Below are positions 31,936 through 64,000 of a DNA stretch of 64,000 nucleotides, piece after piece (position 1 is the first letter of the stretch; each line of letters opens with the position of its first letter). The DNA is taken from the NCBI RefSeq assembly GCF_036588685.1, contig NC_086373.1, positions 90,458,001-90,522,000 of the forward strand. The letters run 5' to 3'. This DNA is from Mytilus trossulus. Its lineage: Eukaryota. Under the pieces are notes generated by a model. It did no database searches, was not told the DNA's origin, and saw only the letters and a list, made by a program, of their open reading frames with translations. A program made the translations under genes and the position numbers.

Positions 31936-32160
31936 AGTGTTAGTGGTGTTTGTTCCACAGGGTTATGTTATGCGTCTAGTGCGGTAGAACTATTTATATG
32001 GTTCTTATTGCCGCTGGCTAGCATATTTTATGTGAAAAGGAAGCCGAGTGTGTAAGTCTTTCCTGCCAGTATACAGCCTCTACATTACCAAGACTCCAGC
32101 AGTATCCTCCTCGTTGGTAACACTGGTAACTGACATCTTTCGAAGTCAGGCTGAACTGCT
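31936..32160 (+). ncRNA. HDV-like self-cleaving ribozyme in the RTE 5' end
   Basis: P2 AGCAGU (32098-32103)/ACUGCU (32155-32160); L3 UCCUCGU (32108-32114); P1 3' strand UAACACU (32118-32124) complementary to AGUGUUA (31936-31942) or GGUGUU (31945-31950); GG 32125-32126; P4 CUGAC/GUCAG; J4/2 G-CUGA. P3 is imperfect. Confidence 0.75.
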
Positions 32161-54935: not shown

Positions 54936-55420
54936 GTATAAATGAGTCAAAATTGAAAACTACGTTCAAACCTATGATTGCGTTGGATAAAAACCGCAAT
55001 TTTTATACGTGTGCATGTAAAACAAATTTCGTTGTAGAAGGGTCTAAAAAATAGCACAAACAACATTTTCCAAAAAAGACCAAAAAAGTGAAAAAGTATA
55101 TTTAAACAAAACGCATTTGACTAACAGGTCGAACAACTGATGTTCTTTAACCCTGCTGACTGCCATTGCCAAATAAAATTGATCACAAGATATAACAAAA
55201 TGGATGAAATATAAATTTAATCTAAACAGAAAACAATTTTTTTACTTGTAGCCACGATGTTATGCCACCAACATACGGTGTCAATAATTTGTTAGTACAC
55301 CAGATCCGGATTTCGACAATAAATGTCTCTTCAGTGATGTTAGGGATCGAAACGGTATTTGGAAGGCCATATAAAAAGTACTCTCATTTTTAGAAAAAAA
55401 GTACCCTCATTTTTAGATAA
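54936..55420 (-). mobile_element. Probable Penelope-like pseudo-LTR fragment next to a (TA)n tract, nested in an older MITE that begins TTAAAGGGGCACTA at about 54431
   Basis: Contains the minimal hammerhead typical of PLE terminal repeats; bordered by (CT)n(TA)n on the left and (CT)n on the right; boundaries approximate. Confidence 0.55.
55297..55340 (-). ncRNA. Minimal type I hammerhead ribozyme
   Basis: Minus strand reads ACAUCA-CUGAAGA-GACA UUUAU UGUC-GAAA-UCCGGA-UC-UGGUGU: full catalytic core, 6-bp stem I, 4-bp stem II, palindromic stem III. Confidence 0.85.
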
Positions 55421-60433: not shown

Positions 60434-61532
60434 ATGGATCCATTCACTAAGAGTAGGGACATTTGTCGATGGTTTCAGCAAATAGGCATTCTTATTTTAT
60501 TTACACAGCTTTTCTTATGTCAAAGTACTTGTGATGTTGAACTTGACACTTTGCAAAAAAGAAGTGCACCTGGCCTTAAAGCTCCCAAAAAACTTTGGTG
60601 GGCCAAAGAATTAACTCCAGATTTACATGTTGCTGGAGGTTTGATTGAAAGACAAATAAAATATGCAGCTGAGGCTGGATTTAAAAGCATTATTTCACTA
60701 TTTAATGACTTGCGTGCTGGAGATTTTGGTGGGGAATACTTACCAACTGCATTTGAGGCAAGTCACATAGCTAAAATTGCTGGACTTCAATATCTTGCAG
60801 TATTAGAAGAAGATGAAGAATTTGCTTCTGAAGATGCAATAAGAAAATTGACTGAAGCTATTTCACAAGTAGAGAAACCAATTCTGCTACATTGTAATCG
60901 TGCATTTACAATAGCATATACAACATTGTTGTATTTGGCAAATCAATCAAGACATGATCCTAATTTTGTTCCACATGTTGACAGTGAAAAATTTTACAAA
61001 ATGAGTGCACTTATGGGCAAAGATTTTACCTCAAATCATACCTTAAAAGCTGTGGTCGCAAAAGTCACTGGTGAACCAATTGTAGAAAATCCACCAAAAC
61101 CAGAAACTGAGCCAGATGACTGGCTTGATTTCTGGCTGGCTCATCCTGTGTACAGAAACTGGTATACTGCTGGACAGATTAGAAAAGGACATTTACAGGA
61201 ACTTGAGTTCATAGGCTTTAAATCTGTCATTAATATGAGACTTGATACAACACATAATGGAAAACCATCACAAGAAACTGTTACACTTCTCAATGTCCTA
61301 GATGGTACACCAACATATGACAAGGATTATAAACCTTTACGACAAACACATTCACATATAAAAAACATAATTCTTGATGCTTCAAAACAGAACCATTATA
61401 TCTCTCCAACTTCACCAGTCAATTATGAACATCGACATTATGAAGAATATGGGGATGAGATTGGCTACAATGAAGATCTTCAGAGTGAACACATTAAAGA
61501 ATTTGATCTCGACTACTACCTTTTACCCATAG
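60434..61532 (+). CDS. Exon 1 of a signal-peptide protein with tandem DUF442/TIGR01244-like domains
   Basis: aacATGG at 60434; hydrophobic stretch IGILILFTQLFL; motifs ELTPDLHVAG...AAEAGFKSIISL...AGLQY...KPILLHC, and a second copy WYTAGQI...GFKSVINMR; donor G|GTAGGT. Confidence 0.9.
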
Positions 61533-62391
61533 GTAGGTTCTTTATTCATATCATTTCAGTATCATAACAAAACCCTTTCTTTTAGAGGCAGGTACTAAAA
61601 ACAAATGTAGTTGCAGTGTTCCTGGCATGGCATATGATTTTAATAACAAAAAGATGTACAGCTCTTTTTGAGCTTGCTTCTGATACATGTACATGCAAAG
61701 TATGAAATCACTTCAATTGTTACTTTTGTACAGACTACAGTGTTACATGTACATATACATGTATATGATACTATGTAATTGTTGTACATTGTAGTTCTAT
61801 ATTATTGAATTGTTATATACTGCAAATGCAGGAGGTTGTTTTTCATTTGAATTACAGTAAAGTGATTTTGGAGAACTCATTGAATCAGATTATGTTCCAA
61901 GAGTTACCTCTGAAATAAGAGGTCATCTTACATGCACATTGTTATAACACTTAACAGTCAAATTTTTAAGAGAAACATATACCTGCACCTTATCACATTA
62001 AGCACGTTTTAAAAGTAAGCATACATGTAATGAAACAACATTTGTGTGATACATTTTCCTTTTTTTTTTAAATTCTATATCCTTGAAAGGCAAAAAAAAA
62101 TAATCAGTCTTTCAATAGTATACATGTACATTGTACCTGCAAATTTGATTTTTGTTAGGCCTTACATGATGTATGACATTTCTATTCTTTTAACATGGTT
62201 AAGGAACTGAAAAAAGGCATATTTCTCTTTCTCTTTCTCATATTCAATGACTTTTTCCTACTCCCAACCTTTTTTTGTAAAATGTACAGAATGCAATTAG
62301 TGTTATTGTGCCATCCACTATTAGTTTATCAGGTAAATGAGTATGCACCAATGTAAAGAATAAACTAAATGTTCTTATTATTTATCAATAG

Positions 62392-62502
62392 AGTCAACTG
62401 GAAAGTATAGTAAAGAATTATTTGCAAAGTATAAAGATAAACTGCTAGAGATTGGAAAACAAGGTCCTGTGTTAGTTCATTGTGCCAGTGGAAAGAGAGT
62501 TG
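62392..62502 (+). CDS. Exon 2 of the tandem DUF442-like protein (ESTGKYSKELFAKYKDKLLEIGKQGPVLVHCASGKRV)
   Basis: AG/GT-bounded, 111 nt, phase 1-1; carries the GPVLVHCxSGxR active-site loop. Confidence 0.88.
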
Positions 62503-62800
62503 GTAAGGTTTTTGCTTATAGACACTAACAAATTTTGATTACCTATCTTTGTCAATATCATAGTAAAAGTGACAATAATTTTTAAAAAAGTCCTGCTTTT
62601 AGTGCTTAATATGATTAGGGTAATGCAGATAAAATTGAGAATGGAAATGGGGAATATGTCAAAGAGACAACAACCCGACCATAGAAAAAACAACAGCAGA
62701 AGGTCACTAACAGGTTTTCAATGTAGCGAGAAATTCCTGCACCCGGAGGCAACGTTCAGCAGGTATGCCTATGTCTGTATTTGTGTCAATTTATTCCAAA

Positions 62801-63038
62801 AGAGGGACAAATGAAACTGGAAGGACAGTCAAACTCATACATGTAGATTGAAAATAAACTAACAACACCATGGATAAAAATTAAAAGACAAACAGACAAA
62901 TAATAGTACAAAAGTCACAACATAGAAAACTAAAGACTAAAGCAACACGAACCCCACCCTGGGTTGATCTCAAGTCCACCGGAAGGGTAAGCAGATCCTG
63001 CTCCACATGTGGCACTCGTCATGTTGCTTTTGTTATTA
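62801..63038 (-). mobile_element. 3' UTR fragment of the Penelope-like family in intron 2 of the DUF442-like gene
   Basis: GGAAGGGTAAGCAGATCCTGCTCCACATGT and GGACAGTCAAACTCATA shared with 284..770. Confidence 0.65.
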
Positions 63039-63410
63039 AGTTTGTTCAAAAGTTTGCAATTAGGAATACACAATCCCTATATGTAATAAAACAATTCAAT
63101 GTAATAAACATCAAAATACAGATATAAAGGTGTTATTTTGCCTCACTTTACTTTTACAAAATAAAAAACAATAAAATGTACCATTTCATATTTATATCCC
63201 TTTATTAGGTATGTGTCTAGATGATAGATAAAAAAAGTGAATAAATAAAATATTTAATGAATGATTACAATAAGGCTAATAAAAACCATGTTGAGTTTGA
63301 TTTTTTCATTGTTTTTTTAAATTGTGTGCCATTTGTAATAACTATTTATTACGAAACTAATGATGTGGTCTAAAAAGAGACTAAAAGTAAATTTCAAGCA
63401 TATTTTTCAG

Positions 63411-63580
63411 CATTTATGGCAGTCCTCGCAGCAGCCTTACAACATGAGAAAGATTTTAAGTGGGCACTAAAAAGAATCAATGAACTAGGATTTGAAGTGA
63501 GTCGAACCAAGAACAGAGATGTTTATGAGATGTACTCTGCTTGGCTAAATCCAGATCATGGTAATAAAACAGAGTTATGA
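63411..63580 (+). CDS. Terminal exon 3 of the tandem DUF442-like protein, ending ...HGNKTEL*
   Basis: Acceptor tttttcag at 63410, open in phase 1 to TGA 63578-63580. Total CDS 1380 nt (459 aa). Confidence 0.87.
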
Positions 63581-63743: not shown

Positions 63744-64000
63744 TTTTCATTTTTGTTCGACAAAGGACAGAGCCAATCTTTTTACTTTCTAGATATAAAA
63801 ATTTATAAATATAAATAACCCACCACATTATTAGTGCTATTTAAAATGTAACTAATAATATTATAACATATTTTAAAGAATTATTTTCATTTTTGTTGAC
63901 AAAGGACAGAGCCAATCTTTTTACTTTCTAGATATAAAAATTTATAAATATAAATAACCCACCACATTATTAGTGCTATTTAAAATGTAACTAATAATAT
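63744..64000. repeat. Near-identical ~139-bp tandem duplication running off the window end
   Basis: CAAAGGACAGAGCCAATC at 63761 and 63900. Confidence 0.9.

What the first reader, a model, noticed from the sequence alone, without database searches (positions are those of the whole stretch)
60434..63580. Candidate ER-resident enzyme with two bacterial-type DUF442 (sulfurtransferase/phosphatase-fold) domains in an animal
Seen: the spliced 459-aa product has an N-terminal hydrophobic signal-like segment, two repeats of the pattern (L.VAG/YTAGQI...GFKS.I...L.Y...P.L.HC), and ends in KTEL. The last two exons and the KTEL are invisible in the ORF track. Established: this motif order is that of DUF442/TIGR01244 domains. 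They are mainly prokaryotic and act as rhodanese-like sulfurtransferases fused to sulfide:quinone oxidoreductase or to the BLH persulfide dioxygenase. KTEL is a functional KDEL-receptor ligand, as in AGR2. Inference: a luminal ER persulfide/sulfane-sulfur transferase or atypical Cys-phosphatase, possibly of horizontal origin. I know of no described ER-luminal enzyme of this family. It could link sulfide exposure to ER redox or protein folding.
Basis: partly seen in the sequence, partly recalled or inferred. Interest (0 to 1): 0.88.

Follow-up and report, generated by a model that had tools for sequence, protein, structure and literature searches.

The report
ER-targeted tandem DUF442 enzyme in mussels
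A three-exon mussel gene encodes an uncharacterised protein with a signal sequence, two bacterial-type DUF442 cysteine-enzyme domains and a conserved ER-retrieval tail. It probably puts a sulfur-transferring (or phosphatase-like) enzyme inside the endoplasmic reticulum of molluscs, where none of this family has been described.

Summary
Window 60434-63580 (+) holds a three-exon gene of 459 aa. All three exon translations are 100% identical to Mytilus trossulus XP_063406225.1, annotated "uncharacterized protein". The two halves are homologous (hhalign E 2.5e-13), and both model as PTP/DSP folds closest to DUF442 structures. Pfam PF04273 scores 40 bits against a cutoff of 26.1. Domain 2 carries an H-C-X4-R loop that is invariant in the 26-sequence alignment. 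This short loop is the DUF442 hallmark; bacterial DUF442 domains with measured activity are robust sulfurtransferases and, in the one case tested, a feeble phosphatase. A K/R/H-x-E-L end closes 44 of 58 complete homologue clusters, across bivalves and gastropods. All 44 also keep an N-glycosylation sequon that three independently derived signal-less paralogue lineages have lost. The family is vertically inherited in molluscs and also occurs in annelids and hemichordates, so recent horizontal transfer is not supported. ER localisation is well supported in silico. Sulfurtransferase chemistry is the best guess, not shown. Direct RNA-seq mapping could not be run, and no paper on this animal family was found. 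The scan had already noted this gene (s1-830370, s1-827209) and its paralogue (s1-826699).

The parts
60434..61532 (+). Exon 1 (residues 1-366 plus the first base of codon 367): signal sequence, conserved WWAKE linker, domain 1, and the first part of domain 2 with its insertion
   Evidence: ATG at 60434, GT donor at 61533. The translation is 366/366 identical to P0090.
60434..60526 (+). Predicted signal sequence (residues 1 to about 31): basic n-region, hydrophobic core about 13-29, small residues at C29/S31
   Evidence: Orthologues have classical signal peptides with a 9-residue Kyte-Doolittle maximum of 2.0-4.2 within the first 45 residues. The model shows a helix at 3-30. SignalP was not available.
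60581..61129 (+). Domain 1 (residues about 50-232), DUF442-like PTP fold
   Evidence: PF04273 at residues 59-155, 30 bits alone. VIA Z 12.3 to NMA1982 (2f46) over 55-212.
60893..60895 (+). Codon of Cys154, the domain-1 loop cysteine (H-C-N-R-A-F-T)
   Evidence: Kept in 42 of 44 xxEL-type clusters. Lost in all three signal-less derivative lineages.
60941..60949 (+). N170-Q-S N-glycosylation sequon
   Evidence: Present in 44 of 44 xxEL-type clusters and 2 of 14 others.
61130..61532 (+). Domain 2, first part (residues 233-366), including the conserved insertion of about 65-90 residues (about 61241-61507) that domain 1 lacks
   Evidence: The hhalign register shows the insertion. Invariant residues N287, R303, Q304, S327, N330, E338, G340, D341 and G344 lie in it.
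61533..62391 (+). Intron 1 (phase 1, GT..AG)
   Evidence: The same position is used in the two paralogues of this genome. Exon-1-only ORFs of other bivalves end by reading into it.
62392..62502 (+). Exon 2 (residues 367-404): strand plus P-loop H396-C397-A-S-G-K-R402
   Evidence: H396, C397 and R402 are invariant in all 26 aligned sequences. Cys and Arg are present in 58 of 58 complete clusters.
62481..62498 (+). Codons of the C-X4-R catalytic loop (Cys397 at 62481-83, Arg402 at 62496-98)
   Evidence: The loop has the same length as the NMA1982 C95-R-T-G-T-R100 loop (PMC10716126).
62503..63410 (+). Intron 2 (phase 1, GT..AG)
63411..63580 (+). Exon 3 (residues 404-459 plus stop): C-terminal helices of domain 2, N455-K-T sequon, KTEL (63566-63577), TGA
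   Evidence: 55/55 identical to P0090.

Best explanation
This is a Mytilus trossulus gene for a soluble protein of the ER lumen. The protein has a cleavable signal sequence, an N-glycan site, two homologous DUF442-type PTP-fold domains from an internal duplication, and a C-terminal KTEL retrieved by KDEL receptors.

Domain 2 is the conserved catalytic unit. It has His-Cys-X4-Arg at the strand-helix junction and carries a large conserved insertion that probably forms the substrate site. Domain 1 holds a second loop cysteine (C-[DN]-R-[GA]-[YF]-T) that is kept in nearly all ER-type forms.

Most likely chemistry, inferred by analogy with the assayed bacterial DUF442 domains: a rhodanese-like ping-pong sulfurtransferase. 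Cys397 would take sulfane sulfur from thiosulfate, polysulfide, or glutathione or protein persulfides, forming a Cys-SSH intermediate. It would then pass the sulfur to a thiol or sulfite acceptor, possibly via Cys154. That would clear persulfides and trisulfides that H2S generates in the oxidising ER.

Shown here: the gene model, homology, fold, motif conservation and targeting signals. Inferred: cleavage of the signal, ER residence, the substrates and the relay.
For: Gene and product:
- Gene model verified and identical to a RefSeq protein.
- Intron-less contigs of 1659-2166 nt carry the full ORF.

Homology and fold:
- PF04273 scores 40 bits (E 5e-10) against a gathering score of 26.1. Domain 1 alone, by window reference, scores 30 bits.
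- The AF2 model has pLDDT 89 and pTM 0.86.
- Foldseek's top hit is the DUF442 structure 3gxh (E 9e-7), with NMA1982 (2f46) also listed.
- VIA gives Z 12.3 for domain 1 against 2f46 and Z 12.9 for domain 2 against Tk-PTP.
- Internal duplication: hhalign E 2.5e-13.

Chemistry:
- H396/C397/R402 are invariant with C-X4-R spacing.
- Assayed C-X4-R DUF442 domains behave as follows. The Blh domain is a sulfurtransferase with Vmax 18 umol/min/mg (PMC5823870). The SQR-fused DUF442 is a rhodanese (PMC9163753). NMA1982 phosphatase kcat is only 4.4e-5 per s (PMC10716126).
- There is no conserved general-acid Asp: D at aligned position 367 in 20 of 58 clusters. Ser/Thr after the Arg occurs in only 10 of 58.

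ER targeting:
- 44 of 58 complete clusters end in [KRHN]-x-[ED]-L, across bivalves and gastropods. All 44 keep the N170 sequon.
- KTEL is ER-localising in human proteins, and position -3 tolerates any residue but Pro (PMC2140024).
- Three independent lineages that lost the signal and xxEL also lost the sequon and Cys154.
Against: - No experiment exists on any animal member.
- SignalP could not be run. The Mytilus hydrophobic core is long (about 17 residues, with Gln and Thr inside), so it could be a signal anchor.
- KTEL is reported as a weaker retrieval signal, and AGR2, which carries it, is partly secreted (PMC4940162, abstract seen).
- The TIGR01244 model is far below its cutoff (31 against 85.85 bits), so this is not an equivalog of the bacterial sulfurtransferases.
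- NMA1982 shows that a C-X4-R DUF442 can hydrolyse phosphoesters by the PTP mechanism. The invariant E338/D341 of the insertion could supply a general acid.
- The closest structural neighbours of domain 2 are true phosphatases.
- No fusion partner or gene-neighbourhood clue to sulfur metabolism was found.
- Freshwater snails and mussels also have the gene, so a simple tie to sulfidic habitats is not evident.
Confidence: 0.5

Rival explanations
1. It is an ER-luminal cysteine phosphatase. Cys397 attacks a phosphate ester on a secretory protein, glycan, lipid or nucleotide in the lumen, by the PTP mechanism, with an acid supplied by the conserved insertion.
For: - PTP/DSP fold, with Z 11-13 to archaeal PTPs, SEX4, laforin, PTPMT1 and the RNA triphosphatase domain of capping enzyme.
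- The profile search of PDB sequences gives TpbA and VH1 as best hits.
- NMA1982, a DUF442 with C-X4-R, uses a PTP mechanism.
- Invariant acidic residues E338 and D341 lie in the insertion.
Against: - The loop is one residue shorter than C-X5-R in every member.
- DSPc Pfam scores 15 bits against a cutoff of 33.5.
- The canonical general-acid position is not conserved, and the hydroxyl residue after the Arg is mostly V or A.
- The only measured phosphatase rate for a C-X4-R DUF442 is negligible, whereas sulfurtransferase rates are robust.
Confidence: 0.3
2. It is a catalytically quiet binding protein or redox-sensing module of the early secretory pathway. The conserved cysteines would serve for mixed-disulfide retention or sensing rather than turnover.
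For: - Tandem PTP-fold proteins often contain an inactive domain; Cdc14, RPTP D2 and the tandem PTP-like phytase all appear among the hits.
- The domain-1 loop lacks the Arg.
- Owenia's KQEL form has Ser in place of the domain-2 Cys.
Against: H-C-X4-R is kept in 58 of 58 complete clusters of the set (molluscs and Ptychodera), including the paralogues that lost ER signals. This is typical of a working active site.
Confidence: 0.1
3. It is a recent horizontal acquisition from bacteria, or bacterial contamination of the assembly.
For: - PF04273 is mainly bacterial.
- The nearest large ESM Atlas clusters are bacterial.
- Among named genomes found in these searches the family occurs only in molluscs, annelids and hemichordates.
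Against: - Two GT-AG phase-1 introns, shared with paralogues and with other bivalves.
- AT-rich animal sequence context.
- The locus lies at 90.5 Mb on contig C1 of the 1.30-Gb assembly; the annotated M. trossulus gene sits on a 113-Mb record.
- The molluscan clade has 100/100 support.
- The closest non-animal relatives carry eukaryote-style signal and hydrophobic-tail architecture and come from marine eukaryote metatranscriptomes.
- An ancient transfer into early eukaryotes or bilaterians cannot be excluded.
Confidence: 0.03

Closest known systems
DUF442 (PF04273) sulfurtransferase domain of Xylella/Agrobacterium Blh, and of Cupriavidus pinatubonensis SQR
   Same: Pfam family above the gathering score; PTP-like fold; a catalytic Cys at the strand-helix junction. 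The Mytilus domain-2 loop has the C-X4-R spacing reported for the DUF442 protein NMA1982; I did not inspect the Blh or SQR loops. This is the best-characterised biochemistry of the family: thiosulfate/GSSH/polysulfide transfer (PMC5823870, PMC9163753).
   Different: The bacterial domains are single, cytoplasmic, and fused or adjacent to persulfide dioxygenase or SQR. The mussel protein is a tandem of two diverged domains with an insertion of about 65-90 residues, a signal sequence, an N-glycan site and KTEL, and no dioxygenase or SQR partner. TIGR01244 scores far below its cutoff (31 against 85.85 bits).
NMA1982 of Neisseria meningitidis (PDB 2f46), a DUF442 protein
   Same: C-X4-R loop of the same length (C-R-T-G-T-R against C-A-S-G-K-R); structural match to domain 1 at Z 12.3; exported from the cytoplasm (NMA1982 is secreted).
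   Different: Single domain of 156 residues. It was described as a PTP with very low kcat and has a WPD-like Asp71; the aligned position is not conserved in the mussel family.
Tandem rhodaneses (TST, MPST)
   Same: Two homologous domains from a duplication, with one fully conserved catalytic Cys loop of six residues. The domain-1 loop C-D/N-R-G/A-Y/F-T resembles what I recall of the bovine rhodanese active-site loop (from memory, not checked here). There is a weak Pfam Rhodanese match at 366-415 (19.2 bits, cutoff 22.2).
   Different: A different fold (rhodanese/Cdc25, not PTP/DSP). These enzymes are mitochondrial or cytosolic, not ER. The resemblance is convergent at the loop level only.
Cdc14, receptor-PTP D1-D2 and the tandem PTP-like phytase (3f41)
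   Same: Tandem PTP-fold architecture in which the two domains have unequal active sites. They appear as full-length Foldseek hits.
   Different: C-X5-R loops and true phosphatase activity. They are cytosolic, nuclear or bacterial, have no KDEL signal, and show only about 10% identity.
AGR2, CDNF and other KTEL-ended ER proteins
   Same: The same retrieval tetrapeptide on a soluble secretory-pathway protein. KTEL was shown to be ER-localising (PMC2140024).
   Different: Unrelated folds (thioredoxin-like, saposin-like). They share only the sorting signal.

Membership tests
DUF442 / BLH_phosphatase (PF04273) | Match to the Pfam HMM at or above the gathering score (26.1 bits) | tested here: met
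   Exon 1 by window reference: 30 bits, E 7e-7, residues 59-155. Full-length P0090: 40 bits, E 5.4e-10. In Owenia, Ptychodera and several metatranscriptome relatives the best PF04273 stretch falls in domain 2; only Owenia P0113 (29.9 bits) and P0188 (29 bits) pass 26.1.
DUF442 / BLH_phosphatase (PF04273) | PTP/DSP-type alpha/beta fold most similar to solved DUF442 structures | tested here: met
   Foldseek top hit is 3gxh (E 9e-7), with 2f46 also listed. VIA Z 12.3 (2f46) and 11.7 (3gxh) for domain 1. Other PTP folds score equally well for domain 2.
DUF442 / BLH_phosphatase (PF04273) | Shortened C-X4-R active-site loop (one residue fewer than the PTP C-X5-R) | tested here: met
   Domain 2 has H396-C-A-S-G-K-R402, invariant in 26/26 and with Cys and Arg in 58/58. 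NMA1982 reference loop from PMC10716126. Domain 1 lacks the Arg and does not meet this.
DUF442 / BLH_phosphatase (PF04273) | Sulfurtransferase (rhodanese-type) activity dependent on the loop Cys | not testable with these tools
   Known for the Blh and SQR-fused domains. No assay exists for any animal member.
TIGR01244 family sulfur transferase (NCBIfam) | Score above the curated cutoff (85.85 bits) | tested here: not met
   31 bits, E 2e-7, two stretches. It is a relative, not a member of this bacterial subfamily.
Classical dual-specificity phosphatases (PF00782 DSPc) | Pfam gathering score, C-X5-R loop, conserved general-acid Asp, Ser/Thr after the Arg | tested here: not met
   DSPc scores 15.3 bits against 33.5. 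The loop is C-X4-R. Asp sits at the aligned acid position in 20/58, and S/T follows the Arg in 10/58.
Rhodanese (PF00581) | Pfam gathering score and rhodanese fold | tested here: not met
   19.2 bits against 22.2 at residues 366-415. The fold is PTP-like, not rhodanese.
Soluble ER-resident proteins retrieved by KDEL receptors | C-terminal tetrapeptide accepted by KDEL receptors | tested here: met
   KTEL at 63566-63577. It is ER-localising on AGR2, PCYOX1 and KTELC1, and the -3 position is permissive (PMC2140024). 44 of 58 homologue clusters end in [KRHN]-x-[ED]-L.
Soluble ER-resident proteins retrieved by KDEL receptors | Cleavable N-terminal signal peptide | tested here: inconclusive
   A hydrophobic N-terminus is seen in all xxEL forms whose N-terminus is complete, and several orthologues have classical signal peptides. 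No SignalP-type predictor was available. The conserved N170 sequon, found only in these forms, is indirect support.
Soluble ER-resident proteins retrieved by KDEL receptors | Experimentally observed ER localisation | not testable with these tools
   Needs tagged expression with and without KTEL.

The most novel reading that the evidence does not exclude
Molluscs, and in related form annelids, keep a dedicated sulfane-sulfur transferase inside the ER lumen. It strips persulfides and trisulfides from folding proteins or from glutathione, so oxidative protein folding stays insulated from environmental and metabolic H2S. The same enzyme has been re-targeted away from the ER at least three times independently, probably to mitochondria. 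Each time it lost the domain-1 cysteine and the glycan site. This would be a previously unrecognised compartment of animal sulfide metabolism.
Probability: 0.3. Interest if true: 0.85.

Novelty: new variant of a known kind. Interest (0 to 1): 0.62.

Why it matters
Animal sulfide detoxification, as I know it, is a mitochondrial pathway (SQR, ETHE1, rhodanese). My searches found no luminal ER enzyme that handles sulfane sulfur. Yet H2S diffuses freely, and in my reading it should react with the disulfides and sulfenic acids that the ER makes. A conserved ER-targeted DUF442 enzyme in molluscs gives a concrete, clonable candidate for that missing function. Alternatively, it would be an ER-luminal cysteine phosphatase, which would also be unusual. 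The repeated ER-to-non-ER retargeting, with correlated loss of one cysteine, offers a natural experiment on what each domain does. The animals concerned include aquaculture species and vent or seep taxa (Solemya, Gigantopelta, Lamellibrachia). The claim remains computational.

Tried and rejected
**Could not be run**
There is no direct RNA-seq check of the junctions.
- Model coordinates are not exposed. I could not measure the Cys154-Cys397 distance or see whether E338/D341 reach the active site.
- No signal-peptide or mitochondrial-targeting predictor was available; I used hydropathy and motif heuristics only.

**Run, but uninformative**
- A six-frame PF04273 search of the 1.3-Gb genome found nothing at genome-wide E-values. 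This is a sensitivity limit, not absence, since the protein itself passes the Pfam cutoff.
- Longer relatives from metatranscriptomes were scanned for fusion partners that might reveal the substrate; none was found.
- Searches for DUF442, 'beta-lactamase hydrolase-like' and ER persulfide sulfurtransferases found no paper on an animal member.
- The Rfam gathering scan of the window gave 0 hits.

**How the full-length steps were done**
Exons were searched one by one by window reference. All full-length steps used public protein records returned by the tools (P0001, P0090), which match the exon translations.

**Considered and rejected**
- Contamination or recent HGT, because of the introns, the chromosome context and the vertical tree.
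- An ordinary eukaryotic DSP, because DSPc is far below its cutoff and the loop is C-X4-R.
- I did not attempt a domain tree with bacterial DUF442. At about 110 residues and 15-20% identity it would not resolve the origin.
Full report
**Gene model**

- An ATG at 60434 opens a frame that runs to a GT donor at 61533.
- Exon 2 is 62392-62502, with AG at 62390-91 and GT at 62503.
- Exon 3 is 63411-63580, with AG at 63409-10 and TGA at 63578-80.
- Both introns are phase 1.

Each exon was searched by reference. The first protein search returned a 459-aa RefSeq protein of Mytilus galloprovincialis, 98% identical to exon 1.

The cluster listing and a script then showed that P0090 matches all three exon translations at 100%. 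P0090 is M. trossulus XP_063406225.1 (LOC134690175, "uncharacterized protein"). It has the residues expected from the two split codons, E367 and A404. The window is therefore most probably M. trossulus, and the gene model is already in RefSeq, unnamed.

However, three Logan contigs of only 1659-2166 nt encode whole 459-aa ORFs, 94-99% identical to the exon translations, with the same junction residues and KTEL. The genomic gene spans 3147 nt. These contigs therefore lack the introns, and I read them as transcript assemblies.

**Domains**

Pfam places residues 59-155 in PF04273 (BLH_phosphatase, formerly DUF442). The score is 30 bits for exon 1 alone and 40 bits (E 5e-10) for the whole protein, against a gathering score of 26.1. 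DSPc, Y_phosphatase3 and Rhodanese give only sub-threshold matches around the exon-2 loop. NCBIfam TIGR01244 matches twice but far below its cutoff.

I sliced a 26-sequence alignment (A1) at the domain boundary and compared the halves with hhalign. The result is 98% probability, E 2.5e-13, over 141 aligned columns. The two halves are therefore true repeats. Domain 2 carries about 65-90 extra residues between its second strand and the Y-Y-x-x-P motif. That insertion contains many invariant residues: N287, R303, Q304, S327, N330, E338, G340, D341 and G344.

AlphaFold2 on A1 gives a confident model, with pLDDT 89 and pTM 0.86.
- Foldseek's best PDB hit is the Shewanella DUF442 structure 3gxh (E 9e-7). 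NMA1982 (2f46) and tandem PTP-fold proteins (the PTP-like phytase 3f41, Cdc14, RPTP D1-D2) also appear.
- VIA-align assigns domain 1 to 2f46 (Z 12.3, 140 residues) and 3gxh (Z 11.7).
- It assigns domain 2 to small archaeal and dual-specificity PTP folds (Z 12-13).

**Active sites**

In domain 2, H396, C397 and R402 are invariant in all 26 aligned sequences. Cys and Arg are present in 58 of 58 complete clusters, always with C-X4-R spacing. This is one residue shorter than the PTP signature C-X5-R. It is also the peculiarity reported for the DUF442 protein NMA1982, whose loop is C95-R-T-G-T-R100 (PMC10716126).

Two further PTP catalytic features are not conserved. The residue at the aligned general-acid position (367) is Asp in only 20 of 58 clusters. 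The residue after the Arg is Val or Ala in 46 of 58 and Ser or Thr in 10.

Domain 1 has a different loop, H-C-[DN]-R-[GA]-[YF]-T, without the Arg at +5. Its Cys154 is present in 42 of 44 ER-type clusters but in only 4 of the other 14.

**Targeting signals**

Among complete homologue clusters from the first search, 44 of 58 end in [KRHN]-x-[ED]-L. The counts include KDEL 15, KEEL 7, REEL 4, RVEL 4 and KTEL 3, plus single cases such as HDEL, HNEL and KNEL. They span bivalves and gastropods, while the residues just upstream vary freely in length and sequence.

Raykhel et al. tested such variants experimentally. They found KTEL to be ER-localising on human proteins, and found that the -3 position accepts any residue except Pro (PMC2140024).

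Every xxEL form with a complete N-terminus begins with a hydrophobic segment, and many have textbook signal peptides.

An independent line of support is the N-x-S/T sequon at N170. It is present in 44 of 44 xxEL forms and in only 2 of the other 14. The sequon is kept wherever the secretory signals are kept and is lost with them, as expected if it is glycosylated in the ER lumen.

**Evolution**

An exhaustive profile search found 1160 relatives at E<=1e-3 and 101 at E<=1e-30.
- Named members are molluscs (bivalves and gastropods, including Patella), annelids (Owenia, Capitella, Lamellibrachia) and hemichordates (Ptychodera, Saccoglossus, Glandiceps).
- Unnamed members come from marine eukaryote metatranscriptomes. 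They carry signal peptides and hydrophobic C-terminal tails.
- No vertebrate, arthropod, nematode, echinoderm or cnidarian name appeared. The searches cannot prove absence.

A maximum-likelihood tree recovers a molluscan clade with 100/100 support, in which xxEL is the general state.

Signal-less, xxEL-less forms arose separately inside mytilids (100/99, sister to the window's gene) and inside oysters (100/99). Patella's only copy is of the same kind. All three lost Cys154 and the N170 sequon.

In this genome the mytilid derivative lies 34 kb downstream of the window's gene, with a further copy on contig C6. Both share the same two intron positions. Their N-termini are basic and free of acidic residues, which is compatible with a mitochondrial presequence. 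I could not test that.

Many exon-1-only ORFs from other bivalves end by reading into the same phase-1 intron, so intron 1 is old. Recent horizontal transfer or contamination is therefore rejected. An ancient bacterial origin of the domain remains possible and was not tested.

**Likely function**

The biochemistry available for C-X4-R DUF442 domains points one way.
- The Blh DUF442 domain transfers sulfane sulfur from thiosulfate to cyanide or GSH, with Vmax about 18 umol/min/mg (PMC5823870).
- The DUF442 domain of C. pinatubonensis SQR is a functional rhodanese whose Cys94 controls sulfane-sulfur flux (PMC9163753).
- The phosphatase activity of NMA1982 has kcat 4.4e-5 per s.

Together with the missing general acid and the missing hydroxyl residue, I judge a rhodanese-like ping-pong sulfurtransferase at Cys397 the most likely mechanism, at about 0.45-0.5. 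Cys154 could be a second, ER-specific relay or acceptor site.

A luminal phosphatase is the serious rival, at about 0.3. The fold neighbours are phosphatases, and the conserved insertion could supply the acid.

The physiological idea is that the enzyme clears persulfides or trisulfides formed when H2S meets the oxidising ER. That is inference only.

**Novelty and verdict**

The parts are known: the DUF442 domain and KDEL-type retrieval. The combination has no description in the literature I could search. It comprises a tandem DUF442 with a conserved insertion, ER targeting conserved across Mollusca, and repeated retargeting with correlated loss of a cysteine. I class it as a new variant of a known kind.

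The horizontal-origin suggestion is not supported. The sulfur chemistry is plausible but unproven.

Earlier notes of this scan cover the same gene (s1-830370, s1-827209) and its downstream paralogue (s1-826699).

Noticed in passing
window 63563-63571 (N455-K-T), just before KTEL at 63566-63577: An N-x-S/T sequon sits within the last 12 residues, next to or overlapping the retrieval tetrapeptide, in 19 of 44 xxEL-type clusters (for example NSTKDEL, NKTGREEL, NRTDKDEL). A glycan there might mask KDEL-receptor binding and allow regulated escape from the ER. This is speculative.
   Followed up: partly
G000:C1:90552918-90559913 (34 kb beyond the gene, outside the window) and G000:C6:38610666-38615421: Two paralogues (55% identity) share the same intron positions. 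They have a basic, non-hydrophobic N-terminus (MVVRIAKRN...), no xxEL, no domain-1 Cys and no N170 sequon. They are probably retargeted, possibly to mitochondria. The same kind of derivative arose independently in oysters and in Patella.
   Followed up: partly
G000:C1:81335832-81364383 (minus strand): A second, inverted copy of both the ER-type gene and its tandem paralogue lies about 9 Mb away on the same contig. It is 98.2% identical over 1949 nt, intron included. RefSeq also annotates two loci in M. trossulus. It is either a recent segmental duplication or an uncollapsed haplotype.
   Followed up: partly
window 63751-63861 and 63890-64000: A 111-nt direct repeat (97% identical, spacing 139 nt) lies downstream of the stop codon, in the 3' UTR or flank. 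The second copy is cut by the window end.
   Followed up: no
window 62640-63010 (intron 2): A stretch that looks less AT-rich than the rest of the intron and may be an interspersed repeat or SINE-type insertion. Not analysed.
   Followed up: no
whole window, including 55297-55340 and 31936-32160: An Rfam scan at gathering thresholds found no RNA family anywhere in the window. The hammerhead and HDV-like ribozymes proposed in earlier scan notes are therefore not confirmed at that threshold. Permissive thresholds were not tried.
   Followed up: partly
P0113 (Owenia fusiformis), P0112, P0085, P0087, P0110: Outside molluscs most animal homologues end in a hydrophobic tail (GPI-signal or TM-like) instead of xxEL. 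One Owenia copy ends in KQEL but has Ser in place of the domain-2 Cys. The ancestral location may have been the cell surface rather than the ER.
   Followed up: no
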